Shown here: in pieces, positions 833 through 63,786 of the stretch | Layout: each line of letters begins with the position of its first letter | Numbering within the stretch: the stretch's first letter is position 1 | From: Macrostomum lignano | Taxonomy: Eukaryota | Assembly (NCBI GenBank): GCA_002269645.1 | Contig: NIVC01000221.1 | Location: 248,001-312,000 of the forward strand | Direction of reading: 5' to 3' | DNA: 64,000 nt | Notes under the pieces: generated by a model | Databases searched by the model: none | What the model saw: only the letters and a program-made list of their open reading frames with translations | Told to the model about the DNA's origin: nothing | Translations under genes and position numbers: made by a program

Positions 833-1551
833 ATGTTCTACAGACATTCAGTCGTTCTGGTCGCTGTATGCACCTTCTTTGTCCTCGCCGCTGGCAGGGT
901 GATAGAGTTTTCTTACGTTGGCTGCTTTAAAGACGAAGGAAGCAACAGAGCCTTAAACGGATTCGTGGATGTCACAAGCGTTGGCCGATACGGGAACACA
1001 GTACATTCGGCCATCCGTAATAGCGGGATGACCCACGAAATGTGCGGCAGCATTTGCTCCTTGGGCGGATTCCTAGCTGTTTTTCGGGGTGCAGCACCTA
1101 CTGCTACTGCGGCTCATCCTATGGCTCAGTCGGATCAGTCGCTGACAGCCTGTGCAGCACTGTGAGCTCTGGAAACTCCAGTCAAATGTGTGGAGGCAGT
1201 TACAAAAACTCAGTTTTCGCTTTGACCTACCCGAGTGAGTGTTCATACTAAAAGTGTAAACTGTTAGCGACCAATGAATCAACGTGGGCCTATTCCCTAA
1301 ATTATTTCATTTCGCAATTTCAGATAGCAAATGTTTTCAACAGACTGCCAGGCAAACCCTCACAGTGACTGCCTCGCGACAGATCCACTGGACCCGCCCT
1401 ACAGGTTACCTGTGTGATGCTGTGCGAGGCCTCAGCTGAGTGCCAGGCTGTGATTTTCTCTGGCCAGCAGCGCCTGTGCCACCTGCTGAGGTTCGCCTAC
1501 CCGCCTGCACACCTGAGCAGCACCGATGGGGTGTACTATGTTCGTGGCTGA
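833..1551 (+). pseudogene. WSC-PAN secreted protein, subtype A copy 1 (A1), frameshifted
   Basis: Exons 833-1234 and 1324-1551 (GTGAGT donor 1235, TTTCAG acceptor 1323). Versus A2 it has a +4 insertion (~1075) and a 5-nt deletion (~1098) in exon 1 (net -1), an 8-nt deletion in exon 2 (~1400), and one WSC Cys lost (TAC->VSS). Confidence 0.85.
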
Positions 1552-2544
1552 GACTTGAAATAAGAAGATCTATTTATTTAATAGAAGATAAGACGCAAAT
1601 TAAAACCCTACAAATGTGCATGCTTTGATAATGATTTTCAAAATCAAACCTATATTTTTCTCAACAAAACATACTTGACTACAGCTAATCCCCCCATTAA
1701 CTCACGCTGGCACACGGCTTAAGAGTTTTGCACGCCATCAGGGTAAAGCAATGGTACAGCCATCAAGCATGTCTGGGACTTAGTAATGCGAAGACGTCAG
1801 TAGGGTGCCTAGCAGAATGCTAAACAGATTTGCGTCTGCCGGTTCTGAATGTCCGGCAGCAGTTGCCATAAGCGTTCATCAACGGGCTGGTGAATCAGCT
1901 GATACCACGACGAGTGACAGCACTTTTGCGTGCTCGTGCATGGTTCCTGGACACGCTACTGAAACTGGAATTAAAGACACTGCCACGTGACAGAGTCAGT
2001 TTGGGGGGGGCGATTAGCTTTACATGCTTGTGTTTAAACAACAGCTAATTATTGTTGAATTTTTGTTTCCTATAAGTCCTGAACTTGTTGTTTTCCATGT
2101 TCAACTGGTCTTAGAAATATTTTCTGATAGGATCCGTATTTTTGAGAGGTTCTTCTCAAAATACACACGAAGAAATACACGTTTCTGGGCACCACATATT
2201 CTTTTCATCCAACAGGCTTGCAATATTTAAGACTTCAAGTCAGAGGCTCAACTACAATTGTGATTCTCACTGTGCATCTCCTTAGTAACCTTGGCGCTAT
2301 CAACATTGCAGAGTAGACGGAAAGACAGGTAGAAATATGCATATCAGATGCCGTAAGAGACCAATTGAGCTGTGGCTGAAATTTTTTACAGCAGTAGAAT
2401 CAGTGAAAACGTGTTAAAAGCGATGTTTTGAAAAAGAACTTATGAGTAGTCAGAAAATTGTATTTGTTGACTAATCGAACATCGACACTGTATGGCTGAC
2501 GTCATATAGAGCGAAATGTGTAAAAACCGTAAGCTCAGATGGTA

Positions 2545-2990
2545 GCCAGACACTTTATTGCAGATAATTTCGGTGCCAAGACAGTTCGAGTGCCAGAGCG
2601 AGTGGCATCTTTAAAAAGAAGAGTGAGTTGCGGAGAGGTGTTTTTCCTTTGGGCATAAAAAATACAAGCTGGCTACGTATAAAAGACAAAAAAAATCGTA
2701 CTTACAAAAAAGCTAAGAAATGCTAAAAAAGACTCACTTGCACTAACTCGTGTGCAAACTAAGAAATGACAAACCGTGTTAATAATGTGTATCGTTACCG
2801 GCTGTATTGGAAAATACCATTCTAACAAAATTCACCAAAACCTGACGAAGACTATAGAATGCAGAATCCAGATATTTTTCTTTTTAATAAATTTGATTAC
2901 TATGCCATTATTCAGTAGCATAAAAACTAGTATGACATGCACCGAAGTGACTTGGCACCGAAATATTTGGCACCGTCGTATCCAGTTTTC
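2545..2990. mobile_element. Possible MITE with imperfect ~40-bp inverted ends
   Basis: TTTCGGTGCCAAG near 2568 and inverted CTTGGCACCGAAA near 2960, with further GGCACCG copies; no TSD identified. Confidence 0.3.
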
Positions 2991-3769
2991 TATCAGACTT
3001 TTGAGGAGCGTGAGAAAGTTACAGGCCTAATTAGGCTGTTATTACAGTGTACTCTTAATTGTTCTCTGAAGCCTCGTCTGAGCTGATGCAGAGAAATGAG
3101 GAGAAATTCAAGCCGTCACAGGCAAACTTTGCCAGCAGGAATGTAGAAACAGGCTGCAAAATCAAACAGAGCGAGCTGTGAGACACGAATTACTTTCACA
3201 GTCCCTGCTTTGTGTAAAAACTGCGCGTTATAGAAACTCGTAAAACTGTATTTAGTGAGTTTCATATTACCACAGCATCGCCCTCGGTAGATATGTTATT
3301 TCTAAAAATTTTAGCGTGATGGAAAACCCAAACAGAGTGAAGGCCTCTGTTACTATGACTACGGGGGAAACTCAAGTGAAAACTTAAGTAAAAGTGTTTA
3401 TTATCAACACTATGAGCGTACGTTATCAGATCCTCCCGCAAGTTTTCTCTTTTTTCAGCTTTGATTGCTCATAGCTTTGGCTGTGATTTCCGAGATATAA
3501 TTACGACATTTCAAAGAGAGCTCAGACGCTGACTAATATTTACTAACACCCCTTACTTAAGATGGGTGTTACGAACATACGTTAAGCCAACAAACATACT
3601 ATACTTTAAGTAAGACTGGCTCATTACGTACATGCACATGGGCCTTCAGAACCTACACTCCAGGACACCATGTGGACTGTGCTTCTTGCAATTTCTAATC
3701 ACCTAGATGTTCTATTATTTTGCCCTGTCTCCTTTCTGTTTCTGCCTCCGCAAAATATATGTAGCCCTT

Positions 3770-4370
3770 TTCCTTTGCTCATACTCCACCCCCTTGGTTC
3801 GGCAGGCATCTTGGTGATGACCGAACTTCTGTCACTTTGAGCACTGGTGGGGTCAGGTGGGGACACTTTGCCGCCCAGTGAGACTGGGAGCCCAAAGAAA
3901 GCTGGCCCGATCACGAGGATTCCGTGTTTTGGCTGCCTTCTCGTGCTTGACGTCGTGACTTGGTAATTTCACTTTGCTGATGGCGTCTGTTCCTCTCTCC
4001 GCTGTCTCCAAGATGACCGCGATCTTGTGGAAGCTGCTCGGAGAGTCGTCTGGAGCAGGCGTCTCTGAATCTGCGAATTACGGAGCCCGGTCACCAGCTT
4101 GTCTCTCGGTGCTTCATCCAGGATTTTCTCAGTTGTTCCAGATAATGGCTGATGCTCTCGCTCTCGTGCTGACTGCGCCGGTAGAAAATTGAACCTTCTT
4201 CACCACCTTTCAAAGCTTGGGGTTAAAGTGCTCCCGGAGAGTCTTGATGATGTCAAGAGGTCTCCTTCGGCTTCTTTGGGGCCAACAGATCTCGCAACAT
4301 TGTCACTGTTGTAACGTTCGAGAGTCCTGGCATGTCTAATTTAATGAGCCGCTGCTGCGAGCACATTTAT
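3770..4370 (-). mobile_element. gag: Degenerate Ty3/Gypsy (Mag-like) gag fragment
   Basis: Minus-strand peptides LRDLLAPKKPKET, FYRRSQHESESISHYLEQLRK, LDEAPRDKLVTGLRNSQIQRRLLQ and a broken CCHC knuckle CSK*QKFGHHQDAC, with stops and frameshifts. Paralogous copy at ~22510-22970. Confidence 0.7.
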
Positions 4371-4480
4371 GCATACTTTGCTTTCTCTGCTCGACCCTCG
4401 ACTCTATGGGACCGCTCTTTGAGCCATAGATAACAGCATTAAAAGGGACAAATGAAGCAATATAAGTTACAGTTGGAAAT

Positions 4481-4551
4481 GAGTAGGTCCGGATGAAGCT
4501 CTGAGGCTAAGTGGGTCTGGATGAAGCTGTGAGGCTGAGTGGGTCTGGATG
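4481..4551 (+). repeat. Orphan ~2.5 units of the 28-bp stop-codon minisatellite
   Basis: GAGTAGGTCCGGATGAAGCTCTGAGGCTAAGTGGGTCTGGATGAAGCTGTGAGGCTGAGTGGGTCTGGATGA with no exon 2 in front of it. Confidence 0.85.
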
Positions 4552-5070
4552 ATTAAGAGTTTCAAGATAAAATGGTTGAGGTTTACCAGCTAATATTTCG
4601 AATTTTCTTTTTTGCCTAACTAAACGTGCAGTTTTTCTTCTTGTTTTTTTATTCAGATTATTCCAACTTTGCAGGTAGTCTTTTTAGTTGTAATATTCGG
4701 TTGGAATAAACCCTAAGAAACACTCTTTCCTATATTATTCATTCAAAGTCAATTTTGACTCCAATTCAAATACAGTGCCAGAGATTTGCCTGATATTCTC
4801 CTCTTGCTACTCATCGGTAGGCATCTCTCACGCACATCCAGGTGACACCTCAGCCAATCCTTGCACAGCATTGGCTGAATGGGACAGCATGAAGCGTACT
4901 TGCTAAATACTACAAAAGCCAGCGTCTCCTTGTTTTCCACTTCTAATTCTGCTAGGTGGTCCATATTACCATTGGCTTCTTCCAGCAAATATATTGTTTA
5001 GGTTTCTTGCTTGAAACAGAAGAAGCGTCTCAGAAACTGCCGTTCGGCCACTCTCTGGGATTTTTTCCCA

Positions 5071-5906
5071 ATGCTGAAACTCTGCGCTCTGCTGCTCTGC
5101 TGGGCAGTCGGTTCCGGACGCTGCGCCGCTGCTGCGGAGCCGCCTCAACCGTTGGAGTTTCGCCACCTCGGCTGCTACGTGGATGGCGCTGTTGGCAACC
5201 GAGATCTTGTAGGACTGCAGGGGGTCAAAAAGTTCGGACAGTTTGAGACTCACCCTACTAACCCAGCTTTCGCTTTTGACTTCGCCAAGATGACACTGCA
5301 ACTTTGCAGCCAGATGTGCTCTTACGGCCGATTTCGCTACTTTGGAGTTCAGTCTGCGGCCTTCTGCTGCTGCGGCTCGGCCTACGGATCGCACGGCACC
5401 GCGCCGGCTAGCGACTGCAGCAGAGCTTGCAGTGGAGCCCTGTCTCAGATTTGCGGTGGAGAGTCGAGAAATTCGATCTACGAGTTGACTTATTCACCAA
5501 GTAAGCGTTGCGAATTAAAGCAGCTCGTAGAAGTGTAAAGATAGTCTCACTTAGCCAGACGACGTAAAACGCTGCAGATGTTCTAAAGTCGTCCTTAAAT
5601 GTAGTTCGGACTGGGCCATTTCAAATATCAAAACAATTTTTTGTAACCAACCCTTCTGCAGTCGATCCAATGATGCCGAAACTGCCCGTGACGTCTCTGC
5701 CGAACATCACAGCCTCCGCGAGCTCAGTCACCCACAGCAGCGTCTCTGCCAAGAGTGCCATCCAGTGCGCTGCCGCCTGCCAGCGAAGCCCGGACTGTCA
5801 GGACTGCGCCTTCGTGCCTTCGAGCCGCATGTGTCGCCTGCTGAGATTCGCCGCTGTGCCCGCTGAGGTGGCCAGCGAGGCTGATTGGGTCTGGATGAAG
5901 CAGTGA
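5071..5906 (+). CDS. WSC-PAN secreted protein, subtype B copy 1 (B1), 224 aa
   Basis: Exons 5071-5500 and 5662-5906 (phase-1 intron GTAAGC...CTGCAG, 675 nt in frame). Signal peptide MLKLCALLLCWAVG; WSC motifs LGCYVD, MTLQLCSQMC, FGVQ..FCCCG, CSRACSG..QICGG; PAN-like CAAACQRSPDCQDCAF..MCRL. Confidence 0.88.
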
Positions 5907-6240
5907 GGCTGAGTGGGTCTGGATGAAGCTGTGAGGCTGAGTGGGTCTGGATAAAGCTGTGAGGCTGAGTAGGTCTGGATGAAGCAGTGAGGCTGAGTGG
6001 GTCTGGATGAAGCTGTGAGGCTGAGTGGGTCTAAATGAAGCTGTGAGGCTGAGTGGGTCTGGATGAAGCTGTGAGGCTGAGTGGGTCTGGATGAAGCAGT
6101 GACTGAGTGGGTCTGGATTAAGCTGTGAGGCTGAGTGGATTTGGATGAAGCAGTGAGCTGAGTGGGTCTGGATGAAGCTGTGAGGCTGAGTGGTTCTGGA
6201 TGAAGCTGTGAGGCTGAGTGGGTCTGGTTGGAGCTGCGAG
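5877..6240 (+). repeat. 28-bp minisatellite, ~13 units, overlapping the B1 C-terminus and stop
   Basis: Unit GAGGCTGAGTGGGTCTGGATGAAGCTGT; the first unit encodes EADWVWMKQ and its stop spans the unit junction (T|GA). Confidence 0.95.
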
Positions 6241-7053
6241 TCTGTTCGATTTAATGGCAAACACTGATAGGAGTTCTGAATGATAATCCTGACGTACTTT
6301 TAAAAACAAAAGTGATTCATGTATTGGTTCTGTTTCATGTCTTATTATTTATAAAACTATCTAGAATAACAAATGCTATTAAAAGTTTTAAGAGCTTTAA
6401 ATCTTTTATTTTCTCTTAATTGTCCATTGGCAGAACTGTTGTATACGGTATATAAACATATGTTGTGTTATGTGTATTTATAAGCTTTAAATTTTTGGAT
6501 ATTAGTTTACCGTCTATTAAACTAAAACTCCATGGCTAGACTACATGTATATTTTATTCTACGCTTTTCACGTCTTAGGCTATCATTTATAAAGCTATCT
6601 AGAATGACAATTTCAAATCCGAGTTTCGAAGTGTCAAGGTTAAAGAGTTTTAAGTTTTTTCTTTTTGCATTGTTTAGCTACTGTAAAAATTAATGTTTAT
6701 GGTAAAAACTTTAAAATTTTCTGGATACATTACTACTTTACTGTTGTACCATTACGAGTTGTAAGAACTCCATGACTAGTTGACAGTTGGAAAATCATTT
6801 GCAGCCGTACGGCATTTTAACGTTAAATTTTTAAACAAAATTTCAATTCGAGCTAAACGAAGCTCAATTTGGACAATCTAGTGGAGTTCGGTTTTTGCGG
6901 CACTTCAGTTGAAACAAATTCTCTTTCTTACAGGCTAAGTTTTCCGAATTGGAAAATGTTTTCCGACAGTCTATGGCCGAAACCGCTTTTGAGTGGCGAC
7001 TGCGCTCTGATTAAAGCTTCAAGGAAACAGATCAGAGTCACTTTCAGGAGCCA

Positions 7054-7144
7054 GAGAGCGAGAGAAAGAGAGAGAGAGAGGGAGAGAGAGAGAGACAGAG
7101 GGGGGGGGGAGACAGAGAGGGGGAGAGAAAGAGAAAGAGAGAGA
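7054..7144. repeat. (AG)n microsatellite
   Basis: GAGAGA run interrupted by G tracts; related tract at ~31928-31978. Confidence 0.9.
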
Positions 7145-8012: not shown

Positions 8013-8212
8013 GCACTTGATAAGCCAAGGATTATTGCACTTGATAAGCCAAAGATTATTGCACTTGATAAGCCAAAGATTATTGCACTTGATAAGCCAA
8101 GGATTACTGCACTTGATAAGCCAAGGATTATTGCACTTGATAAGCCAAGGATTGTTGCATTTGATAAGCCAAGGATTATTGCACTTGATAAGCCAAGGAT
8201 TATTGCATTTGA
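8013..8212. repeat. 24-bp tandem repeat, ~8 copies
   Basis: Unit GCACTTGATAAGCCAAGGATTATT. Confidence 0.95.
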
Positions 8213-8225
8213 CTTCAGATGCCAC

Positions 8226-8590: not shown

Positions 8591-8613
8591 AATCACCATT
8601 TGATAGTTAAAAA

Positions 8614-12491: not shown

Positions 12492-13480
12492 ATGTCTTCA
12501 AAAAGCTTTTCTGTCGGTTACTTGCTGATGTGGGCGGCGTTCGGAAGCTGCTTGACTTCTGTGCCGCCTCATCCGACGGCATTCCGCTACATCGGTTGCT
12601 ACGGGGCCTCCGCGGACCCCGACATGGCAGGTCTCGTTGGAGTCGCTACGCTCGGTCCGTATTCGACCTTTTCAGAAAAACCATTTCTTGTACGAGACTC
12701 TTCGATGACGCTGCAGATGTGCAGCCAGATCTGTGCTTATGGGAGATTTCGATACTTCGGTACGAGGTACCGTGCATACTGCTGCTGTGGCAACAGCTAC
12801 GGCTCGTTCGGTCCCGCCCCGGAGAGTGACTGCTCGCATAATTGCTACGGAAACTCATCCCAAATCTGCGGTGGAATTCAGAGGAACTCCGTCTACGAAA
12901 AAATTTATAATCATGGTGAGAGCATTATTCTGAACTTTTCTGAAGCGGATTTGGTTTCTTCTTGCCATGACGGGGAACAATAAGTTATAACGTCAAAAAC
13001 TGTCACCACGAAGCTAGATACCAGTGACAACTTAACCAATTCTCTAACTAACTAAAATTAACTAACTCAAATTAACTAACTCATTTTCTTTTTAAAACTC
13101 TGCTGCGAACACACTCTTGGATAATACAGACTGAATAATTCACAGAGATTTGCCCATATAAATACACTCCAAATATAGTATTTTTAGTTTTGAGGAAATT
13201 TTTTTCTAAATTCTGTTGTAACGCATCTTTTGTAGCTGGCCAAGCAGTGACCAAGCTGCCAGCTTCTGCCATGCCGAGCATCTCAGCTTCACTGAGCTCC
13301 ATCACCCACAGCAGCGTCTCTGCCAAGAGCGCCGTCCAGTGCGCTGCCGCCTGCCAGCGAAGCCCGGACTGTCAGGACTGCGCCTTCGTGCCTTCGAGCC
13401 GCATGTGTCGCCTGCTGAGATTCGCCGCTGTGCCTGCTGAGGTGGCCAGCGAGACTGAGTGGGTCTGGATGAGGCTGTGA
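12492..13480 (+). CDS. WSC-PAN secreted protein, subtype C copy 1 (C1), 222 aa
   Basis: Exons 12492-12915 and 13236-13480 (GTGAGA...TTGTAG, phase 1, 669 nt). Hydrophobic leader, WSC Cys pattern intact (but GCYGA instead of GCFVD), PAN-like exon 2. Confidence 0.87.
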
Positions 13481-13856
13481 GGCTGAGTAGGTCTGGATGA
13501 AGCTGTGAGGCTGAGTGGGTCTGGATGAAGCTGTGAGGCTGAGTGGGTCTGGATGAAGCTGTGAGGCTGAGTAGGTCTGGATGAAGCTGTGAGGCTGAGT
13601 AGGTCTGGATGAAGCTGTGAGGCTGAGTGGGTCTGGATGAAGCTATGAGGCTGAGTAGGTCTGGATGAAGCTATGAGGCTGATTATGTCTGGATGAAGTT
13701 ATGAGGCTGAGTAGGTCTGGATGAAGCTGAGGCTGATTATGTCTGGATGAAGTTATGAGGCTGAGTAGGTCTGGATGAAGCTGTGAGGCCGAGTGGTTCT
13801 GGATGAAGCTGTGAGGCTGAGTGGGTCTGGATGAAGCTATGAGGCTGAGCTGGTCT
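13451..13856 (+). repeat. 28-bp minisatellite, ~14-15 units, overlapping the C1 stop
   Basis: Same unit as 5877-6240, with variants GAGTAGG, GATTATG and AAGCTAT. Confidence 0.95.
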
Positions 13857-14482
13857 GCACTGGCAAGCACTGAGAATAATTCTGAGTAATAATCGTAGCA
13901 GGCTAACAAAAATACACGAGAATCATATTTTGGCAGTGCTTTGAGTGTTTATGAGTGTTTCTAATATCAACTGCAAATCTGAAACTTTAAGCCAGGGTCT
14001 CTTAATTTATTGAGTCGACAAATTGAGAGCCGTTCTGAGACACCTGGACCCAGACAGTGTTGAGTTGACGGGTGTTCATCAGACGCCAATGCAGGACGAA
14101 ACGACAGGCCAGATCCAGTGATTGTGCAGCTTCGAGCGCAGTTGAAGAGAGCCACGGGCCCGATGTGTCAATTGATGACAGCCCGATGGTGATTGTATCT
14201 CAGGAATTTGTTCAAAAGCAGTCTGGTGAAAGAGAGAGAAAGAAAAGATAATTGTTTAGGTTCCGATGGAGGGAAGCGAGCTCTTGTCAGCATAAGAGGC
14301 TCAAGTACAAATTTTGTGGTTCTCAAGAAATTAAATATATATTTCCTTACTATTTGTGAATGACTGTTTATTTATTTCCAGAAGCCTGGTAGATTCAAAT
14401 TTGGATTTTCTTTGATTCTTTTTGCCCTTCTGCCGCGCGCCTCTGACTGTTAGTTCTCACGTTTACTTGGCACCATAGTTAA

Positions 14483-21031: not shown

Positions 21032-21764
21032 ATGTTCTACAGACAGTCAATCGTTCTGGTCGCTGTGTGCACCTTCTGGGTCCTCGCCGCTGGCAGGGTG
21101 ATCCAGTTCTCTTACGTTGGCTGTTTTCAAGACGAAGGAAGCAACAGAGACTTGAACGGATTTGCGGATGTCACAAACGTTGGTGGGTACGGAAACACTG
21201 TATATTCGGCCATCCGTAACAGCGGGATGACCCACGAAATGTGCGGTAGCATTTGCTCGTTGGGCGGATTCCTGTTTTTCGGGGTGCAGCACCAACGGTA
21301 CTGCTACTGCGGCTCATCCTATGGCTCAGTCGGATCAGTCGCTGACAGCCTCTGCAACACTGCGTGCTCTGGAAACTCCAGTCAAAAGTGTGGAGGCAGT
21401 TACAAAAACTCTGTTTTCGCTTTGACCTACCCGAGTGAGTGTTAATACTAAAAGTGCAAACTGTTAGCGACCAATGAATCAAAGCGGGCATATTCCCTGA
21501 ATTCTCTGATTTGATTTCGCACTTTCAGCTAGCAAATGTTTTCAACAGACTGATAGGCCAACCCTGACAGTGACTGCCTCGCGACGGATCCACTGGACCC
21601 GCCCTGCCGGAATCGATGTCACCTGCGTGATGCTGTGTGAAGCCTCAGCCGACTGCCAGGCTGTGATTTTCTCTGGCCAGCAGCGCCTGTGCCACCTGCT
21701 GAGGTTCGCCTATCCGCCTGCCAACCTGAGCAGCATCGATGGGGTGTACTTTGTTCGCGGCTGA
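21032..21764 (+). CDS. WSC-PAN secreted protein, subtype A copy 2 (A2), 212 aa
   Basis: Exons 21032-21434 and 21529-21764 (94-nt GTGAGT...TTTCAG intron, 639 nt in frame). Leader MFYRQSIVLVAVCTFWVLAAG, full WSC Cys set, exon 2 CVMLCEASADCQAVIF..LCHL. Confidence 0.9.
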
Positions 21765-23149: not shown

Positions 23150-23447
23150 GCCGTTCGGTTCCGGATGCTGCGTTGCTGCTGCAGTGCCGCCTCAACCGTT
23201 GGAGTTTCGCCACCTCGGCTGCTACGTGGATGGCGCTGTTGGCAACCGAGATCTTGCAGGACTGGAGGGAGTCAAAAAGTTCGGACAGTTTGAGACTCAC
23301 GCTGGTATCCCAGCATTCGGTTTCGACTTCGCCAAGATGACACTGCAACTGTGCAGCCAGATGTGCTCTTACGGCCGATTTCGCTACTTTGGAGTTCAGT
23401 CTGCGGCCTACTGCTGCTGCGGCTCGGCCTACGGATCGGATCGCACG
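23150..23447 (+). pseudogene. Subtype B fragment (B2): no start codon or signal peptide, truncated at the microsatellite
   Basis: Versus B1, a 64-nt deletion (equivalent to 5048-5111, TCGG microhomology) removes the ATG and leader; a GGATC duplication follows, then the exon is cut at 23447. Confidence 0.88.
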
Positions 23448-24551
<1,104 letters not shown>

Positions 24552-24790: not shown

Positions 24791-25672
24791 ATGCTGAAAC
24801 TCTGCGCTCTGCTGCTCTGCTGGGCAGCCGGTTCCGGACGCTTCGCCGCTGTTTCCGTGCCGCCTCAACCGTTGGAGTTTCGCCACCTCGGCTGCTACGT
24901 GGATGGCGCTGATGGCAACCGAGATCTTGTAGGACTGGAGGGAGTCAAAAAGTTCGGACAGTTTGAGACTCACCCTGGTTTCCCAGCATTTGTCTACGAT
25001 GGCGCCAAGATGACACTGCAACTGTGCAGCCACATGTGCTCTTACGGCCGATTTCGCTACTTTGGAGTTCAGCTCCACAGCTTCTGCTGCTGCGGCTCGG
25101 CCTACGGATCGCACGGCATCGCACCGGCTGGCGACTGCAGCAGAGCTTGCAGCGGGAACTCGTCTCAAATTTGCGGTGGAGCTTACAGAAATTCTATCTA
25201 CGAATTGACTTACTCACCAAGTAAGCGTTCCGGATTAACGCAGCTTGTACAAGTGTAAACACAGGTTGCGTAAATTTAGCGAAGGACGACCTAAAAACAC
25301 TGAACTCTTTTTTCATTAAAATCAGTTCTCATTGGGAGATTTTACAAGCAATATTCGAATTGATTTGACCGATAAAAATATTAACAATAATATTGGCATG
25401 CCATATTTTCAACCAACCCTTCTGCAGTCAATCCGGTGATGCCGAAACTGCCCGTGACGTCTCTGCTGAACATCACAGCCTCCGCGAGCTCCATCACTCA
25501 CCGCAGCATTGCAGCCAGCAGTGCAGTTGAATGCGCCACCATCTGCTACGGCAGCCCGGACTGTCAGGGCTGCGCCTTCGTGCCTTCGAGCCGCATGTGC
25601 CGCCTGCTGAGATTCGCCGCTGTGGCCGCTGAGGTGGCCAGCGAGGCCGAGTGGGTCTGGATGAAGCTGTGA
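24791..25672 (+). CDS. WSC-PAN secreted protein, subtype B copy 3 (B3), 224 aa
   Basis: Exons 24791-25220 and 25428-25672 (GTAAGC...CTGCAG, 675 nt in frame); all WSC and PAN Cys present. Confidence 0.88.
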
Positions 25673-25871
25673 GGCTGAGTGGGTCTGGATGAAGCTGTGA
25701 GGCTGAGTGGGTCTGGATGAAGCTGTGAGGCTGAGTGGGTCTGGATGAAGCTGTGAGGCTGAGTGGGTCTGGATGAAGCTGTGAGGCTGAGTGGGTCTGG
25801 ATGAAGCTGTGAGGCTGAGTGGGTCTGGATGAAGCTGTGAGACTGAGTAGGACTGGATGAAGCTGTGAGAC
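25643..25871 (+). repeat. 28-bp minisatellite, ~8 units, overlapping the B3 stop
   Basis: Nearly perfect GAGGCTGAGTGGGTCTGGATGAAGCTGT units. Confidence 0.95.
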
Positions 25872-26999
25872 TGTTCGAACTAATAGCAAACACTGAAAAG
25901 AATTCCGAGTAAGTAATTATCGTGGCGAACCTATACCAAAAATACACGAGAATCAGATTTTGGCTGCGCGTTATGTCTTATTGTTTATGTAGCTACCTGA
26001 AATAACAACTGCAAATACAAAGTTTCAAGTGTCTTTTTTCTACGAATTTTTCCCTTTTATTTTAATATTTAGCCTGATATCCGACATGAACCACAGACAG
26101 GTATTTGACGACTTGAGTTAGGGTGCATTCTGCATAACGACGTAAATGATGGTCCAGTGAAGCGAAGCAAGAAGGAATATAAAACTGTATCTTGGAGTTG
26201 GTGCAGTGTCGGTAGAAGTTTTTTTGGAATATCTAGCTGAGGTCCTCTTAGCCTTTCGCAAGCTAAAATCAATTTGTAGTTTGCAAGTGACTGTAGCCCC
26301 AAACTTTTCACCTGGAATGAAATACATAATCTCTTCTTTAGCCATTCGGAATTCCAAAAGATGAGGTAAATGGAAATCAGTATAGAAAAACACAAAGCTT
26401 CCGATGTCTCTGATGCATATTGCAGCGAAATACAGGCCTCAAGGGACTGTGTTCTGCTACTGTTTCTCCACAAGCCATCCTCTTCACCAGCCTCTTCCTT
26501 GATTTCATTTTCTCCGACTATTTCAGTTTCAAGACATATCCTGCCGGCCTCATCTTCATGCGCACTCATGGCGATGGCTGTTAGATCTCTATCGAATTCG
26601 ATGAGTTCGATTGATGAGCCGGTTGGAGTCACACAATACTCTATCGACTCTGTTTCTGTTGAACTTCAATTCAGCGGGCTGTCGCCATTGAAAGGTTTTG
26701 GCCATAGACTGTTGGAATGAATTTTCCAATTCAGACACTGTAAGCCTATAGAAAGCAGGTAGTTTGTTTAAATTGAATTATCGTGGGAATGACAATCCAC
26801 TACATTGGAACTTTGTAGTGCTTTTATAGTGTGAGTATTTTTTTGTATTCATCCCAATAATGCATCTGTTTTAGTGACTCACGACTCAGTAACATTTATT
26901 CAGAGCAAACGACTCAGTAACATTTATTCAGAGCAAATGATGTATTTATTGCTTAATGCCTTAAGCCTGCATCTCATGATTTTCTTTTACGAGCTAGAT

Positions 27000-29385: not shown

Positions 29386-30326
29386 ATGTCTTCAAAAAGC
29401 TCTTCTGTAGGCTACTTGATGATGTGGGCGGCGTTCGGAAGCTGCTTGACTTCGGTACCGCCTCATCCGACGGCATTCCGCTACATCGGTTGCTTCGTGG
29501 ACTCTGCGGACCCCGATATGGCAGGTCTCGTTGGAGTCACTGCACTCGGTCCGCATTCGACCCATTCAGAAAATCCTTTTCTTGTTCGAAACACTTCGAT
29601 GACGCTGCAGCTGTGCAGCCAGATCTGCGCTTATGGGAGATTTCGGTACTTCGGTACGAGGTACCGTGCATACTGCTGCTGCGGCAACAGCTACGGCTCG
29701 TTCGGTCCCGCCCCGGAGAGTGACTGCTCGTATTATTGCTACGGAAACTCATTCCAAATCTGCGGTGGAATTCAGAGGAACTCCGTCTACGAAAATATTT
29801 ATAATCAGGGTAAGAGTGATTTTTCTGAAGCGCTTGTTGTTTTTCTTGCCATAACGAGGCACAGTACGTTCTAACGTCGTTAAAACGTCAACAACTCTCA
29901 CACGAAGCTGGATGCCAGTAACAAATTAACTATTTCTAAGATGTTCTTTTTAAAACTCTGCTGCAAATGCACACTTTTTGAAAATGCCTATTGAATAAGT
30001 CACAGAGATTTGCCCATATAAATGCGCTCCTATTTGTGACGTAGTTTTTTTACTGAATTCTGTTTTAATTCAACTTTGCAGCTGACCAAACAGTGACAAA
30101 GCTGGCAGTTTCTGCCATGCCGAGCATCTCAGCTTCACTGAGCTTCATCACCCACAGCAGCGTCTCTGCCAAGAGCGCCATCCAGTGCGCTGCCGCCTGC
30201 AAGCGAAGCCCGGACTGTCAGGGCTGCGCCTTCGTGCCTTCGAGCCGCATGTGCCGCCTGCTGAGATTCGCCGCTGTGCCCGCTGAGGTGGCCAGCGAAG
30301 CTGAGTGGGTCTGGATGAAGCTGTGA
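29386..30326 (+). CDS. WSC-PAN secreted protein, subtype C copy 2 (C2), 222 aa
   Basis: Exons 29386-29809 and 30082-30326 (GTAAGA...TTGCAG, 669 nt in frame); canonical YIGCFVD. Only ~1.5 units of the 28-bp repeat (30297-30340). Confidence 0.88.
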
Positions 30327-32484: not shown

Positions 32485-33753
32485 GCGGAGCACCATGCTG
32501 ACATGCACAGTTCGCGCCGATCGCGGTGTCCCAGATGGCCTTCGTGGTATCCAGGGAAACCAAGCTCCAAGCTACATGTTTATGCGCAAAGGAAACGTGC
32601 TAGTGTTGAAAATAGTTGACAGGAAGAGCTCGGGCCTAAAGAAAGTTTACTTCCTTGACACGCAAGGCGTAGCCCAACTTCACCCTGTTCACCGAATCGT
32701 GCGAAACGAACTGATCATCCAGCAGAAGCAACAGACAGTTGTGTCGTACAACAGATTTATGGGTGGTGTCGACAGGCTGGACTCTGCCTTGCAGCCATAC
32801 AACCCATGCCGGCGGACTCAGAAGTGGCCCACAAAGCTCGGCGCGCACCTTTTTCTTGTACTGTCCAGAAATGCCTGGGTTGTGTACCGATAGTGCGGCG
32901 GAGGTACACTGGAGTTTTTAAAGTTTTTGGAGACCATCATCAAGAACTTTATCGACTCCTCTGGACCAGGTCGTGTAAGAGCTGCTCGGGCACAGCAGCA
33001 GCCAGCAGTGGCTCACCAACAGCACTCGCTGAAGCGCATTGAAGCCACCGAAGCGCAAGCCCGACCAACGAAGCGGTGCAGGCAGTGCTACAAGAACGGC
33101 CAGGCCAAGAAAACAGTCTTCTGCTGCGGCTCTTGTGAAGGCAACCCTGGACTGTGCGCAGCCCCCTGCTTTGCCGACTGGCATGCCGCTCAGGTGTAAC
33201 TTAAATTTGTTTTTAGTTTTCAAAGCCAAAGGTAGCTCATTTTTAATTGACAAACATTATGCGGCATAACTTCGGTTTCTCGCTCTAAATTATTTTCCGG
33301 ATTCTTTTAAACTTATAGTAAAAAAATTTCATAATCTGGAAAGGCCCGAAAAAAAGTAACGCAGGCTTAAAAGCATATTGGGCAGTATTAAATGCCTGAA
33401 AATCCAGTAAAAAATTTATTGCAGGAAACCGAATTTATGCCCAAAAGCCATCTGGTTATAAACAGGTTATGTTATTGTTACTGTTTAGCTGTTAAACATT
33501 GTTCATACATTATAGCAATTTATGTTCTTGATTTTTTATGTTTCTTATTAAAAATGACTACATCAGATAGAAAAACTCGTTGACCGTGATCTACAAAATG
33601 TTTTCTGTATAGAAAATAGTCATGGCCTGCTCCGCAGGCCAAAGCCGCAAGCTACGGTTATTTAGACTTATTTTTCGAAACAGCATCGAAATGATTCGCA
33701 AGCCATAGACCATGAGCTATGGCCTGCAGAGCAGGTCACCCGCATCCTCGGGG
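32485..33753 (+). mobile_element. 5'-truncated piggyBac (second family) with defective transposase C-terminus
   Basis: ORFs 32495-32893 and 32927-33199 are in one frame split by a TAG; MGGVDRLD motif and CRQC...CCGSC...LC..PCFADWH; right end ...CCTCGGGG|TTAA (33754-33757). Confidence 0.9.
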
Positions 33754-34276: not shown

Positions 34277-34615
34277 GGGGGGCCGTAGCCCAGCGGTAGC
34301 GCAGCTGCTCTGGTGTGCCAGCGACCCAGGCTTGATTCCAAGGGCAGTCACATTAATTTGGGGCTGAATTGGAATCTCGGCTTGGCTCTGCTCGTGCAAT
34401 TAACGGCCTTGAGAGCCAACCCCCCAAGGCGCAGTGAAGTGTACATGCCTAACGATAAAATAAAGTTAGGGCCGCTGTACACTCCTGTGTGAGTGTGTGC
34501 CTGCGTACGTATCCGCGCGCTTGTATGCCTGCTCAGGGGAGTCGGCGGAATGGGCAGTAATGCCTCTCGCCGGTTGTGTGCCTATGTCGCTTAAAGTGCG
34601 CCAGGGTGCACACAC
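34277..34615 (+). mobile_element. tRNA-derived SINE (family 2)
   Basis: A-box TAGCCCAGCGG, B-box-like GGCTTGATTCC; near-identical inverted copy at 39754-40125. Confidence 0.75.
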
Positions 34616-37432
34616 GCTGCCACCAGCCCGTACGTCCTGGCTCACCACACCGGGACTCTCGAAATCGGGCTTCCGACTAGAAGGGGCTTTGCACTTACCA
34701 GCCAACTAGTGTCGTTTTGCTGTCTATCTCGAAGTCATAGCCGATGATAAGGGACACTGCTGGGACTAGATCGCATTGGCCATGCAGGTACAGAGGGGAC
34801 TTGTGCAGGGGATTCTTGCAGTGGTGAGACTATGGGGTAGCTACATGTACTATTACATTGCTAAATACGAGGAAATGTACTTTTGGCTTTCAACGCACCA
34901 ACCAGCCTCTCCTAGCGCTGATGATAGGCTAACTCGAACTTCAGAGACCGCATGATTCATTACCCGAGCGCTTGCCGAACCTAGAGTGCACAAAGTACAT
35001 CTCTAGCGCCGATTCTGCACTATTGGCAATTTCGCTAACTGATTTGATAGATTGATCGACTGAGAACTGCCTTGCCATTGGTCCACTGTGACCGGCGCCT
35101 ACTAGCTTAGCTACTCATCTGAGCCATCGGCAAACAAAGAAATAAAACCGGTAAAATAACTGTCAGATTTAACCTTCTCCTTAGATCACTTCACACCTCA
35201 GATTTGAATTGGAGTTGTAGACTACTAGCAGTATTATTGAATGACTTCTGCCTCAGTAACAGCACTACTGAACAAAATGAGCAAAAGTGTGCGCCTAATC
35301 CAGCTACTGAAACAGGGGGCAGATAAGGAATCACCCAATCAAGCAAGTCTAGGTAGCCTCTCACCCAACCAATCAGAAACTCAACAGCCGGAGACCAGGT
35401 AATCCACAGTGATCGAATCGGCTTAGTGCTTCGCAGCTGTAGACCCGGGATGATGCTGATGTCACAACCTTCGCAGGTAGCTAGCAGGTGATGCTCTCGA
35501 CTTTGATGTTCACTGCTGATGACCGGGGGAATTCGTCCTTGATGATGATGGGGGGAAGTCGCAATCCGGGGATCAAGAAACGACGGTCGAGCTCCGGGAA
35601 CCAGAAGTTGCGTACTGGGCCCGAGCGAGGAAGAGCCAGGTCACAAGAAAGTTGCCGTCCGAGCGGGCCAAAAGCACCGGTTTAAATAGCCGCCAACTGG
35701 ACCGCAGTTTGTTATAATGGAACACGTCGATTCTGATTGGCTGAGCCGATTTGTTAAAATGAGCGTCGAATTTTCTGATTGGCTAAGCTTGAAGAATCAC
35801 GTGACCGGGAGATCCTATCAGTTCTCTCAGGGTCGTAAAAATACGACAGGTGCGGTCATAAATCACTCAAAATCGCTAAATAATGATTTATGACCTTTCG
35901 CGTAGGAATGACAAAAATTAATGAAAAAATATACATTAGAAAGCTCTTATTAAGTAGACAGTGAAGATAATGAAGAGAAATAGTTAATCGCTAATCCCAA
36001 AGTACTTTTAGGGGTAAAACGCATAGCTGTCAAAGCTGTAGTATTGAAGCCGAACAATAGGCCCTGACCTCATAAATCTTGATGGCCTGTCAAAAATGCT
36101 GAAAAAAAGCCATCATTCGCATCCTCTCAGACCATCTGGCGCCAGTCTCAGCACTGAGTGAGGCGCAGGCGGCTGTCAGACCAGCTCAAAAGCGATGATT
36201 TATGACCCAAATAGCTGCGCCTATGTAATTAAAACTACTAGTATGGCAAAATCATATATCTAGTATAAATTCTGTGATAATTCGCATTAAAAGGAGAAAA
36301 ATGTCCTTATACCTGCTGTTAGTAGGCTAGTAAGTTTAGAGCCCATGTGCTAGCGCGTGATTTGAAAAAAGTGCGTCCTCATCAAAATGATTAAAATTTT
36401 ATGGCAAAGCAAACAAAGCATAAAGTAGAAAATAGTCTTTAAACGATTGAATAGTAATTTAATGCATTTGTTGCAGAAGCTAATAGTGAAAATATAAGAA
36501 TGATGTGCGTGATTTTGACGTAGTATTGTTTTTGCTATGTAAAACTATATAAGGCGTGTTAATGATAAGGCAATAAAGGCACGCAAAAATAACTCTTGAT
36601 TAGCTGCTACGCTACGCTGCTAGCTGCTACGCTCGTACAATAGGAAAGTCTGCACCCTTCCTAACCTGCAGAGTTTGTTGGTTAATTGATTTTTACTAGG
36701 TCGGCACGCCCTCCGTCCTCGTTGATATTTCATTATCAAAAATTTCAGCGCGACGGACATCATATGATAGTAAACGGCAAATTTTTTAATGAATTACATT
36801 GCACATTTCAATTATTATTTAAAAACCTATTATTTTTAGGGTTAAAAATGGGATTTATGGGATTTTCATTCAAAGATGGCTATAATTTTGCACAACTCGT
36901 TGGTAGACTGTCGTTGCAGCTGAGGTGGCTATATTTTGTTGAATAAATATTACATACATGTACATGTATCAAAGCAATCAAAGATATTTCAAAGCAATCG
37001 CAGGTACAACTCTTATTCATTAAACTTCCCCAAATGTACTTTCAAATAGGTTGTTACAACAGTTGTTACATGCAGTCTGGCTCAATACAGCGACGTTTAG
37101 AATCTGCGCCTTAAAAACTGCTGGATTCAATCTGCTAGGGCTGCTCTCAGCACCTCATCCACATCTCAAAGTAAAGACATGAGCAGGTGAATAAATAGAT
37201 AATTCAGCTAGATAATAGAGATAAAAGAGCTCTGGCAAACTGTCAGAACGAAAACAGAAGACGTTACTATTTCTTCAGTAGTATATAGAAGGCATTTGCT
37301 TTTTGTTTGCACAATTCTGCAGCAGCGTCTCGTATAAAACTATGGCGAGCAAACAAAAAAAATAATGTATAAAAGTGAGCAACACGAAGAATTTTCCGTC
37401 AATTGTGACAATCCCAGGCATCCAAGATCGCA

Positions 37433-38802
37433 ATGCTTGGGCTAGTGTTTATTCGAGCATCCTGCATCCTGGCTGTTCTGGCAGCCAGTGTGTTCACCAG
37501 AGAGGTCCAGTTCTCCTATGTCGGCTGCTACAAGGACAACTCAGTCAGGGACTTGGACGGACTGGGTGGCGTGAGCAGAATCGGTGAGTTCAGCGTCACA
37601 ACCGGAGTGAAGAGCAACCAGCAGAGTCACGAGCTGTGCAGCAGCGTCTGCTCTCTGGGCGGCTTTCCGTACTTTGGCGTCCAGGTGGGCCGTCAGTGCT
37701 TCTGCGGCAAATCCTATGGATCGCGCGGAGCTGCTGCTGAGAGCGAATGCAGCACCGCTTGCCGCGGAAACGGCTCCCAGACATGCGGAGACGCGTACAA
37801 GAACTCCGTGTTTGCGCTGACCTACCCGAGTGAGTGGCGATATGCCGACTTGCAGCTGGCGATGAGGCTAGCACGAATGGCTATTCTGTTTACTCCTGAG
37901 CACTTTGCTTTGCTAGCGGAGATTCTAGACATAGACAATAAGGTTAAGGCCGTGAGCCAGAGTGAGGTTGATTGAACACTTTCTTCTACCATAGACAAAA
38001 CGTGTCCCGCGAATACAGGGAGCGGAGAATACTCATAGTCTCCGCGAATCCAGTCAATATTCTCCGTTCCTTGCATTCGTGGAATTACACTTCAATAACC
38101 AACTGAAACGAGGAGAATGTCTATGCAGAATCTCCGAGGCAACAGAAAGTACCAAAGGAAAAAATGCGAGCGAAGCGAGCATAGACATTCTCCTCGTTTC
38201 AGTAGATTATTATACATACTTCTCGTTCCTTGTTAGCTTGGTGATTTTGTTTCCTTTTGAAAGTTTTGAAAGGGATTAACGTTTAACCAACAAAAGTAAT
38301 CACCCTTTGATCTTAATTACGTAGTTTCTATCCAATGAATTATTGCTAATCTGATTTCATTTATCTTCTTTCTGCATGTAAGTACCATTACCTTCTTCAA
38401 ATTTACAATTTGGAAGTGACCTACAAAGTTGAAAATCTGGCAACCAGCATCCTACAATTAAGTATAACTGCAGTTAGTAGTCACTGCAGGACTTCAATTA
38501 GCCTGTCTAACGCTCATGCAGCATCTCGCACATGTAATTCAACAATGCTTCAACCGAATTTCGCAGACAAAATCTGCTTCAGAAGGGCTGCCATGCCGGC
38601 CCTGACGGTGGAAGCGACCTGGCTGACCTACTGGAGTCGAGCAGCAGCAGCCGATGTTGGCTTCGTGACTCTGTGCGAGGCCAACCCCGACTGCCAGGCT
38701 GTGATTTTCTCTGGCCAGCAGCGCCTGTGCCACCTGCTGAGGTTCGCCTACCCGCCTGCCAACCTGAGCAGCACCGATGGAGTGTACTTTGTTCGAGGCT
38801 GA
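37433..38802 (+). CDS. WSC-PAN secreted protein, divergent subtype A copy (A3), 210 aa
   Basis: Exons 37433-37829 and 38567-38802 (GTGAGT...TCGCAG, 633 nt in frame); leader, YVGCYKD, full WSC Cys set; exon 2 has F where A2 has its second Cys (DVGFVTLC vs DVTCVMLC). Confidence 0.85.

Positions 38803-39269: not shown

Positions 39270-40450
<1,181 letters not shown>

Positions 40451-46663: not shown

Positions 46664-63786
<17,123 letters not shown>

What the first reader, a model, noticed from the sequence alone, without database searches (positions are those of the whole stretch)
833..38802. Tandem cluster of secreted two-domain WSC + PAN/apple proteins: candidate diversified lectin/recognition system
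Seen: at least nine related loci, all on +, with one architecture (leader + WSC exon, phase-1 intron, PAN-like exon). Six are intact, the rest are in various stages of decay, across three subtypes. Known: WSC domains bind carbohydrates in fungal and animal proteins; PAN/apple domains mediate protein or glycan interactions. Inference: a birth-and-death family of small secreted binders for innate immunity, mucus or adhesion. I do not recognise this minimal WSC-PAN architecture as a described family, but I cannot search for it.
Basis: partly seen in the sequence, partly recalled or inferred. Interest (0 to 1): 0.82.

Follow-up and report, generated by a model that had tools for sequence, protein, structure and literature searches.

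The report
Flatworm cluster of secreted WSC–PAN genes
A 38-kb stretch of the flatworm Macrostomum lignano genome holds a tandem cluster of small secreted two-domain (WSC + PAN/apple) genes from a Macrostomum-restricted, uncharacterised family; the only published expression labels for relatives point to the male reproductive system, not to immunity.

Summary
The window is Macrostomum lignano contig NIVC01000221.1, bases 248001-312000.

On the + strand between 833 and 38802 there are:
- six intact two-exon genes (A2, B1, B2, C1, C2, D1);
- one frameshifted pseudogene (A1);
- one truncated fragment (Bx);
- one 71-nt relic of a gene's 3' end.

Every intact gene encodes a signal-like leader and a WSC domain in exon 1, then a phase-1 GT..AG intron, then a PAN/apple domain in exon 2. 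Pfam, structure prediction and Foldseek confirm both domains.

The cluster grew by a roughly 13-kb segmental duplication (A-B-C copied to A-Bx-B-C). It evolves as a mosaic. The WSC exons are saturated at synonymous sites (dS 1.1-2.5). The last 42 codons are near-identical even between contigs (dS 0.04-0.41). In the B1, B2 and C1 genes the final 28 nt of the coding sequence continues as a 3' minisatellite.

Full-length relatives were found only in M. lignano. Three paralogues sit in a published orthogroup labelled testis region and germline. Many other WSC proteins of this worm are candidate prostate seminal-fluid proteins.

The birth-and-death family of secreted binders is supported. The immunity, mucus or adhesion context is not. 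Function remains untested.

The parts
833..1551 (+). A1: pseudogene of the A subtype (WSC exon, intron, PAN exon)
   Evidence: 85-93% nt identity to A2. Has +4 and -5 indels and loss of a conserved WSC Cys in exon 1, and a -8 indel in exon 2.
4482..4552 (+). Relic (2.5 units) of the 28-nt B/C-type 3' minisatellite; the only trace of a ninth locus
   Evidence: TRF; weak tblastn hit to the last 10 residues of the B/C proteins.
5071..5500 (+). B1 exon 1: leader + WSC domain
   Evidence: Gene model; Pfam WSC 43.2 bits; HMM E=1e-48.
5662..5906 (+). B1 exon 2: PAN/apple domain, ending in a stop codon
   Evidence: Phase-1 acceptor; PAN_1 24.0 bits against a cut-off of 21.4.
5877..6244 (+). 28-nt minisatellite (13 units) that starts in the last 28 nt of the B1 coding sequence
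   Evidence: TRF; repeat family D2.
12492..12915 (+). C1 exon 1: leader + WSC domain
   Evidence: AlphaFold2 model of C1 has pLDDT 79; the N-terminal domain matches Kremen1 and Wsc1 WSC domains.
13236..13480 (+). C1 exon 2: PAN/apple domain
   Evidence: PAN_1 25.8 bits. The C-terminal domain of the model matches HGF N domain, plasminogen, factor XI apple domains and the SML-2 lectin.
13451..13857 (+). 28-nt minisatellite (14.6 units) at the C1 3' end
   Evidence: TRF.
21032..21434 (+). A2 exon 1: leader + WSC domain
   Evidence: Pfam WSC 53 bits.
21529..21764 (+). A2 exon 2: PAN-like domain
   Evidence: PAN_1 17.2 bits, below the cut-off. The model of A-type paralogue P0002 (pLDDT 88) shows a PAN fold.
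23157..23447 (+). Bx: fragment of a B-type WSC exon, with start codon and leader deleted and the 3' part missing
   Evidence: 93% nt identity to B1; alignment.
23449..24549 (+). (TATC)275 microsatellite that truncates Bx
   Evidence: TRF.
24791..25220 (+). B2 exon 1: leader + WSC domain
25428..25672 (+). B2 exon 2: PAN/apple domain
   Evidence: PAN_1 22.7 bits.
25643..25873 (+). 28-nt minisatellite (8.2 units) at the B2 3' end
   Evidence: TRF.
29386..29809 (+). C2 exon 1: leader + WSC domain
30082..30326 (+). C2 exon 2: PAN/apple domain
   Evidence: PAN_1 24.2 bits.
37433..37829 (+). D1 exon 1: leader + WSC domain (divergent A-like subtype)
   Evidence: Pfam WSC 55 bits. Not among the called genes of the GenBank record.
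38567..38802 (+). D1 exon 2: PAN-like domain after a 737-nt intron. Phe165 (38662-38664) replaces a conserved PAN Cys.

Best explanation
This is a tandem cluster of a Macrostomum-restricted multigene family. Each gene encodes a small (about 190-210 aa mature), disulfide-rich, secreted protein built from two modules of the PAN superfamily. Exon 1 encodes a signal-like leader and a WSC domain with eight cysteines. Exon 2 encodes a four-cysteine PAN/apple domain.

Shown: the domains, the gene structure, the duplication history, the pseudogenes and the mosaic divergence. The cluster arose by a segmental duplication of an A-B-C unit plus local partial duplication. It loses copies by indels and microsatellite expansion. 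Its 3' end (the last ~126 nt of coding sequence, plus a 28-nt minisatellite in B1, B2 and C1) is kept almost identical among paralogues, most likely by gene conversion or unequal exchange. The WSC exon and the N-terminal half of the PAN exon diverge freely.

Inferred: the proteins act as extracellular binders. The variable WSC / PAN-N-half surface would recognise glycan or protein ligands, and the constant C-terminal PAN half would provide a common scaffold or docking surface. The most likely site of action is the male reproductive system (testis or germline, possibly the ejaculate) rather than immunity. That last point rests only on orthogroup-level expression labels of paralogues.
For: Identity of the locus: window 36664-57964 is 100.000% identical to M. 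lignano NIVC01000221.1.

Architecture:
- Six spliced ORFs with phase-1 GT..AG introns.
- The same two-exon, phase-1 structure right after 'LTYP' in four annotated M. lignano paralogues.
- Pfam WSC 43-55 bits in all six; PAN_1 above the cut-off in B and C types.
- Eight invariant WSC cysteines and a 'CGG' motif; four PAN cysteines, three invariant and one nearly so. This matches the WSC and PAN definitions in PMC9024836.
- AlphaFold2 models with pLDDT 79 and 88. Foldseek gives probability 1.0 to Kremen1 and Wsc1 WSC domains, and 0.9-0.99 to the SML-2 lectin and HGF N-domain PAN folds.
- Hydrophobic leaders in all six.

Evolution:
- Collinear duplication of 240-14000 onto 18679-30500 at 73-88% identity.
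- Pseudogenes A1 and Bx.
- dN/dS 0.14-0.8, so the genes are constrained but not tightly.
- WSC-exon dS 1.1-2.5 against C-terminal-42-codon dS 0.04-0.41, also between different contigs.
- D1 against its copy on NIVC01000782.1: pS 0.17 in exon 1, and 0 of 58 synonymous sites changed in exon 2.

Distribution:
- Mixed-type clusters of at least 7 and at least 4 genes on two other M. lignano contigs.
- In the two member look-ups, the single-unit full-length matches and two long M. lignano models carrying WSC+PAN units carried M. lignano names; P0029 (2673 aa, 7 units) carried none.

Expression context: Mlig012529.g1, Mlig011376.g1 and Mlig003596.g1 (proteins P0005, P0004 and P0007) lie in OG0000005. 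This orthogroup has 92 genes from M. lignano, M. hystrix and M. spirale, and is labelled positional = Testis and neoblast dataset = germline_FACS.
Against: - No expression data exist for the six genes of this window themselves. D1 is not even called as a gene in the GenBank record, and no protein at 90% identity or above to A2 or B1 is in the protein collection.
- The testis/germline label belongs to an orthogroup whose members also carry 'Non-Specific' and 'Other' labels. It applies to A-type paralogues only 52-57% identical to A2 and D1. B and C types were not traced to any orthogroup.
- The 'testis region' is a body slice, not an organ.
- Ligand binding is untested. WSC domains of animals have no established ligand.
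- D1 lacks one conserved PAN cysteine.
- Low dS at the 3' end could reflect selection on the RNA rather than gene conversion.
- SignalP could not be run.
Confidence: 0.55

Rival explanations
1. One reading: a diversified lectin repertoire for innate immunity, mucus or adhesion, expressed in somatic secretory tissue and selected by microbes.
For: The proteins are secreted two-module proteins of carbohydrate- or protein-binding folds. They evolve by tandem birth and death with moderately raised dN/dS of 0.4-0.8 between recent duplicates. The layout of a variable N-terminal part with a constant C-terminal part resembles some invertebrate immune families.
Against: The only traceable expression labels for paralogues are testis region and germline, with no tail or somatic-specific label. 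No study in the searched literature links Macrostomum WSC or PAN proteins with immunity. No immune-type partner domains are present.
Confidence: 0.15
2. Prostate-gland seminal fluid proteins: made in the prostate gland cells, transferred in the ejaculate, and acting on the partner or on sperm storage, like the other WSC-domain candidates of M. lignano.
For: In the two of three parts of Table S1 of Weber et al. 2018 that I read, about two dozen prostate-limited transcripts have WSC-type best hits. Two of them (RNA815_17071.1 and RNA815_32421) align over 207 and 168 aa to an oyster protein named 'Plasminogen', which is compatible with a WSC+PAN layout. Mlig-pro46, with WSCD2 homology, affected sperm competitiveness in one RNAi screen. 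RNA815_80.4, with two WSC domains, is needed for prostate staining. Several of those genes are also multi-copy tandem arrays.
Against: None of the 18 published RNAi primer pairs maps to the window or to six other M. lignano loci with up to 3 mismatches. None of the Mlig gene ids listed for those transcripts matches the ids of the WSC-PAN paralogues. OG0000005 carries no 'Tail' label. Most of the prostate WSC transcripts appear to have other architectures, such as two WSC domains.
Confidence: 0.2
3. The cluster is a decaying, non-functional array: gene relics kept intact only because they are young.
For: Two or three of the nine loci are already dead. D1 has lost a conserved cysteine. The genes are not annotated in the deposited record. 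Transposons are abundant between them.
Against: All six intact genes keep open frames, splice sites, all eight WSC cysteines and dN/dS well below 1 (0.14-0.5) over divergences up to dS > 1. The same architecture is maintained in dozens of paralogues. Per orthogroup OG0000005, it also occurs in M. hystrix and M. spirale.
Confidence: 0.05

Closest known systems
WSC domains of Kremen1 (PDB 5FWS-5FWW) and yeast Wsc1 (PDB 7PZ2); Pfam PF01822
   Same: Profile match E = 3e-11 to Kremen1 and 6e-8 to Wsc1. Foldseek probability 1.0. Eight conserved cysteines and the CGG motif.
   Different: Kremen and Wsc1 are membrane receptors or sensors with other domains (Kringle and CUB; Ser/Thr-rich stalk and transmembrane segment). 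The proteins here are about 200 aa, soluble, and pair the WSC domain with a PAN domain. No ligand is known for them.
PAN/apple domains (Pfam PF00024): HGF N domain, plasminogen, factor XI / prekallikrein apple domains, Sarcocystis SML-2 and Toxoplasma MIC4 lectins
   Same: The exon-2 domain has the PAN fold (Foldseek probability 0.9-0.99) and a four-cysteine core. SML-2 and MIC4 show that single PAN modules can be galactose-binding lectins.
   Different: Sequence similarity is marginal: 15-26 bits, below the Pfam cut-off in A and D types. The C-terminal half is a family-specific, almost invariant motif (C.LLRFA...). There are no protease or kringle partners.
WSC-domain prostate-limited transcripts (seminal-fluid candidates) of M. 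lignano, e.g. Mlig-pro46, Mlig-pro63, Mlig-pro5 / RNA815_80.4
   Same: Same species, secreted, WSC-bearing, multi-copy tandem genes, reproduction-related.
   Different: They are different genes: no primer or gene-id overlap. Those described have one or two WSC domains with no reported PAN domain. Their expression is in the tail (prostate), while the WSC-PAN orthogroup is labelled testis region.
Multi-WSC proteins of fungi, molluscs and uncultured eukaryotes, some with a PAN_4 domain
   Same: They share the WSC module. A few metagenomic proteins (P0095, P0149) have WSC repeats followed by PAN_4.
   Different: They are large (500-2700 aa) and multi-repeat, often fused to glycoside hydrolases or oxidases. 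None of those looked up has the compact leader-WSC-PAN unit.

Membership tests
WSC domain (PF01822) | Score above Pfam's gathering cut-off (27.8 bits) | tested here: met
   43.2-55.0 bits in all six spliced proteins.
WSC domain (PF01822) | Eight conserved cysteines (four disulfides) and the CGG motif (PMC9024836) | tested here: met
   C35, C79, C83, C99, C101, C116, C120 and C128 are invariant in 22 sequences. CGG is present, except CGD in D1. Disulfide pairing itself was not checked.
WSC domain (PF01822) | PAN-like fold wrapped by a long L5 loop, as in Kremen1 and Wsc1 | tested here: met
   Foldseek E = 1e-7 to 3e-6, probability 1.0, TM-score 0.73-0.76 on the Wsc1 chain.
WSC domain (PF01822) | Carbohydrate binding | not testable with these tools
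   Needs recombinant protein and glycan arrays.
PAN/apple domain (PF00024) | Score above Pfam's gathering cut-off (21.4 bits) | tested here: inconclusive
   B1 24.0, B2 22.7, C1 25.8 and C2 24.2 pass. A2 17.2 and D1 15.2 fail. A-type paralogues P0002-P0004 carry precomputed PF00024 hits.
PAN/apple domain (PF00024) | PAN fold: a beta-sheet cradling one helix | tested here: met
   The C-terminal domains of the C1 and P0002 models match SML-2, HGF N domain, plasminogen and factor XI apple domains with probability 0.9-0.99.
PAN/apple domain (PF00024) | Core of four to six cysteines (PMC9249922) | tested here: met
   Four aligned cysteines (C179, C183, C189, C201 in B1 numbering) are present in five of the six genes. 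D1 has Phe165 at the first position, while its copy on NIVC01000782.1 has Cys.
Secreted protein | Cleavable N-terminal signal peptide and no other membrane segment | tested here: inconclusive
   Hydrophobic 10-residue cores with Kyte-Doolittle scores of 1.6-2.8, followed by small residues at -3/-1. Residues 1-24 have pLDDT < 50. SignalP was not available.
Birth-and-death multigene family | Tandem or segmental duplicates together with pseudogenes and fragments | tested here: met
   Collinear duplication; A1, Bx and the 4482-4552 relic; mixed clusters on other contigs.
M. lignano prostate-limited seminal-fluid candidates (Weber et al. 2018/2019) | Identity with one of the screened transcripts | tested here: not met
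   0 of 18 primer pairs map to the window or to L001-L006 with up to 3 mismatches. There is no overlap of Mlig gene ids. Only 18 of the 76 transcripts could be tested.
Orthogroup OG0000005 of Brand et al. 2020 (Testis, germline_FACS) | Membership of the genes of this window | not testable with these tools
   Three A-type paralogues are members. The window's own genes have no traceable Mlig_37v3 ids, and the stored supplement is cut.
Invertebrate immune lectin repertoires | Induction by, or binding to, microbes | not testable with these tools
   No such data were found in the searched literature.

The most novel reading that the evidence does not exclude
The family is a modular recognition system of the male reproductive tract. 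A hypervariable binding face (the WSC domain plus the N-terminal half of the PAN domain) is repeatedly re-assorted, through recombination in the intron and at the 3' minisatellite, onto a constant C-terminal 'handle'. That handle docks on one common partner, for example on sperm or the female antrum. The near-identity of the last ~126 nt of coding sequence across contigs, and its amplification as a 28-nt 3'-UTR array, would then be a built-in device for concerted evolution, or an RNA-level control element, in a sexually selected gene family.
Probability: 0.12. Interest if true: 0.7.

Novelty: new variant of a known kind. Interest (0 to 1): 0.42.

Why it matters
Macrostomum lignano is a model for sexual selection and sexual conflict in hermaphrodites. 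WSC-domain proteins make up a large part of its candidate seminal-fluid repertoire, yet no ligand or mechanism is known for any of them. This cluster defines a compact, experimentally tractable WSC-PAN subfamily of about 200 aa with two exons. It has clear subtypes, it appears absent from the deposited annotation of this contig, and the split between a fast-diverging binding part and a homogenised tail can be tested directly. If the reproductive expression is confirmed, the family would be a good system for studying how secreted reproductive binders diversify. If it is not confirmed, the family is an ordinary lineage-specific lectin expansion.

Tried and rejected
1. Different species. The best protein identities (54% for A2, 84% for B1) and 82-94% DNA identity to four M. 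lignano loci first suggested another Macrostomum species. I rejected this when window 36664-57964 proved 100% identical to NIVC01000221.1. The lower identities are to paralogues.

2. More than eight WSC loci. The six-frame HMM scan gave only marginal extras, at 8359-8475 (E = 0.076) and 19104-18922 (E = 0.33). I do not count these.

3. Link to published seminal-fluid genes through primers. There were no hits.

4. Per-gene expression labels. The stored supplements are cut, additional gene ids were not found, two other papers gave no held supplement files or no matching ids, and no main text mentions the gene ids.

5. RNA structure in the minisatellite and 3' coding region. The z-score was -0.03. 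There were no Rfam families or tRNAs in the window.

6. An apparent 78%-identity replacement of D1 exon 1 relative to its homeologous copy. This was mostly gapped upstream sequence; exon 1 is 92% identical in protein.

7. Exact look-ups of window ORFs in the contig collection found nothing. I therefore modelled C1 and the paralogue P0002 instead.

Full report
**What is there.** The window is eukaryotic DNA at 29-52% GC, with transposons and microsatellites.

I searched it with the WSC and PAN exon translations (tblastn) and with family HMMs over all six reading frames. Both searches find eight WSC exons and seven PAN exons. All lie on the + strand between 833 and 38802, and nothing comparable lies elsewhere.

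Six loci splice into uninterrupted ORFs:

| Gene | Exon 1 | Exon 2 | Intron |
|---|---|---|---|
| B1 | 5071-5500 | 5662-5906 | 161 nt |
| C1 | 12492-12915 | 13236-13480 | 320 nt |
| A2 | 21032-21434 | 21529-21764 | 94 nt |
| B2 | 24791-25220 | 25428-25672 | 207 nt |
| C2 | 29386-29809 | 30082-30326 | 272 nt |
| D1 | 37433-37829 | 38567-38802 | 737 nt |

Each gene has a single GT..AG intron in phase 1.

The remaining loci are dead:
- A1 (833-1551) is a pseudogene. Relative to A2 it has +4 and -5 indels and a Cys-to-Ser change in exon 1, and a -8 indel in exon 2.
- Bx (23157-23447) has lost its start codon and leader through a 64-nt deletion. It runs into a (TATC)275 microsatellite.
- A 71-nt relic of the B/C-type 3' minisatellite at 4482-4552 is the only trace of a ninth locus.

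**What the proteins are.** Four lines of evidence agree.
- Pfam. The WSC domain scores 43-55 bits in all six proteins, against a cut-off of 27.8. PAN_1 passes its 21.4-bit cut-off in B1, B2, C1 and C2 (22.7-25.8 bits). It falls short in A2 (17.2) and D1 (15.2).
- Alignment. An alignment of 22 family members shows the eight invariant WSC cysteines, the CGG motif and four aligned cysteines in the PAN part, three invariant and one nearly so. These are the features that define the WSC and PAN cores in the Wsc1 structure paper.
- Structure. AlphaFold2 models of C1 (pLDDT 79) and of the A-type paralogue P0002 (pLDDT 88) each show two domains. The N-terminal domain matches the WSC domains of Kremen1 and yeast Wsc1 with Foldseek probability 1.0. 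The C-terminal domain matches the SML-2 lectin, the HGF N domain, plasminogen and factor XI apple domains with probability 0.9-0.99. A profile search of PDB sequences agrees.
- Leader. Each protein starts with a hydrophobic leader and has no other hydrophobic segment. SignalP was not available.

D1 carries Phe165 where the family has a conserved PAN cysteine. Its copy on another contig has Cys at that position.

[quoted passage not shown] A KH-domain exon at 47206-47958 (minus strand) led me to contig NIVC01000221.1 of assembly GCA_002269645.1. Window 36664-57964 is 100.000% identical to that contig over 21,301 nt, which makes window position x equal to contig position x + 248000.

D1 lies inside the fetched stretch but is not among its called genes. 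No protein at 90% identity or more to A2 or B1 is in the protein collection. These copies therefore appear to be unannotated. Paralogues elsewhere are deposited as hypothetical or WSC-domain proteins.

Four annotated paralogues have the same two-exon, phase-1 structure, with the intron right after 'LTYP'. This supports my gene models. Two other contigs carry mixed-type clusters, with at least 7 genes in 36 kb and at least 4 genes in 20 kb.

I also ran a full HMMER search of 1.84 billion representative proteins. In the two member look-ups, the single-unit full-length matches and two long models carrying WSC+PAN units (P0031, P0112) carried M. lignano names; the top hit P0029, which holds seven such units, carried no name. 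The other top hits I looked up were large multi-WSC proteins of fungi, cephalopods or uncultured eukaryotes, a few with a PAN_4 domain. Only the best 150 hits are listed, so weaker two-domain relatives in other taxa cannot be excluded.

**How the cluster evolved.**
- Duplication. Self-comparison shows a collinear segmental duplication. A1-(relic)-B1-C1 (about 240-14000) corresponds to A2-Bx-B2-C2 (about 18679-30500) at 73-88% identity. Bx is a further partial copy, 93% identical to B1.
- Recent duplicates. Nei-Gojobori estimates give dN/dS of 0.4-0.8 between recent duplicates.
- Mosaic divergence between subtypes. The mature WSC part has dS 1.1-2.5 and the N-terminal half of the PAN exon has dS 0.6-2.8. 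The last 42 codons have dS of only 0.04-0.41 and dN 0.04-0.11. This also holds between genes on different contigs.
- D1 and its copy. D1 and its copy on NIVC01000782.1 differ at pS 0.17-0.21 in exon 1. None of 58 synonymous sites differs in exon 2. The flanking sequence is 96-98% identical.
- Minisatellite. In B1, B2 and C1 the last 28 nt of the coding sequence is the first unit of a 28-nt minisatellite of 8-15 units; C2 keeps only about one extra unit. The same array follows paralogues on other contigs.

The simplest reading is recurrent gene conversion or unequal exchange confined to the 3' end, possibly promoted by the minisatellite. Selection on the RNA is the alternative. A fold test gave no sign of RNA structure (z = -0.03).

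**What it most likely does.**
- Paralogues are labelled testis and germline. Supplementary tables of Brand et al. 2020 place three A-type paralogues (Mlig012529.g1, Mlig011376.g1 and Mlig003596.g1) in orthogroup OG0000005. This orthogroup has 92 genes from M. lignano, M. hystrix and M. spirale, and none from M. pusillum. Its M. lignano members carry the labels 'Testes', 'Non-Specific' and 'Other' in the positional RNA-seq, with a final label of Testis. They carry 'germline_FACS' in the neoblast/germline data set and no 'Tail' label.
- Other WSC proteins are prostate candidates. WSC-type best hits account for about two dozen of the prostate-limited seminal-fluid candidate transcripts of Weber et al. 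2018 in the two of three table parts I read. WSC-bearing candidates have given RNAi phenotypes in prostate staining and, inconsistently, in sperm competition.
- No direct link to this window. None of the 18 published primer pairs maps to this window or to six other loci, and no gene ids overlap.

I therefore favour a reproductive role: male germline or testis, and less likely prostate. The proteins would be secreted binders whose variable WSC / PAN-N-half face recognises glycan or protein ligands. This step is inference from paralogues at orthogroup level. No evidence bears on immunity, mucus or adhesion either way.

**Comparison with what is known, and novelty.** The modules are ordinary members of the WSC and PAN families. 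The compact leader-WSC-PAN unit, its restriction to Macrostomum as far as I could search, its mixed-subtype tandem clusters and its homogenised 3' end are not described in any paper I could find. However, paralogues have been in sequence databases with automatic domain names since the genome papers. That WSC proteins are prominent in this worm's reproductive secretions is already on record, mostly in supplementary tables and brief remarks. I rate it a new variant of a known kind, of moderate interest.

Noticed in passing
window 5877-6244, 13451-13857, 25643-25873 (relic at 4482-4552); also L002 10721-11219 and L003 1722-2134: A 28-nt minisatellite (GAGGCTGAGTGGGTCTGGATGAAGCTGT) follows the B1, B2 and C1 genes; C2 has only about one extra unit. 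Its first unit is the last 28 nt of the coding sequence, encoding EAEWVWMKL plus the stop codon. It is conserved at paralogues on other contigs. No RNA structure signal was found (z = -0.03).
   Followed up: partly
last 126 nt of every intact gene, e.g. window 5781-5906, 21639-21764, 38677-38802: Synonymous divergence of the last 42 codons is 5-40 times lower than in the rest of the gene, even between paralogues on different contigs. I could not decide between gene conversion and selection on the nucleotide sequence.
   Followed up: partly
window 53605-62823: An LTR retrotransposon that looks intact. It has 777-bp LTRs that are 99.87% identical (53605-54381 and 62047-62823), a gag-like ORF at 54628-55689, and protease / reverse transcriptase / integrase ORFs at 56102-58792 and 58777-60189. 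It is probably a recent insertion. The homeologous contig lacks most of it.
   Followed up: partly
window 14777-16423 (+) and 32495-33199 (+): A full-length piggyBac-type transposase ORF of 548 aa (DDE_Tnp_1_7 E = 2e-69, plus the zinc finger) lies between C1 and A2. A decayed second copy lies between C2 and D1.
   Followed up: partly
window 47206-47958 (-): An exon of a KH-domain, Sam68/KHDRBS-like RNA-binding protein with a Gly/Arg-rich tail. It is annotated in GenBank as BOX15_Mlig023338g2. It was used to identify the source contig.
   Followed up: yes
window 37930-50955 against L006 (NIVC01000782.1): A second copy of the D1-to-KH-gene region exists on another contig at 91-96% identity (homeologue or divergent haplotype), with its own intact D1 copy.
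   Followed up: partly
window 34277-34614 and 39782-40125: Two inverted copies (94% identical) of a ~340-bp repeat flank the D1 gene. Copies also occur near the D1 homeologue. Probably a dispersed repeat; its significance is unknown.
   Followed up: no
window 38662-38664: D1 has Phe165 (TTC) at a position where the other aligned family members have a PAN cysteine. The copy on NIVC01000782.1 has Cys. D1 may have an unpaired cysteine or be on its way to decay.
   Followed up: partly
window 48000-54000: A markedly AT-rich stretch (GC 0.29-0.33 against 0.40-0.50 elsewhere) lies between the KH gene and the LTR element.
   Followed up: no
window 8013-8212, 11267-11482, 60875-61340: Further tandem arrays: units of 24 nt (x 8) and 48 nt (x 4.5), and a 9-15-nt Ala/Pro/Gln-coding array downstream of the pol ORFs, inside the LTR element.
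   Followed up: no
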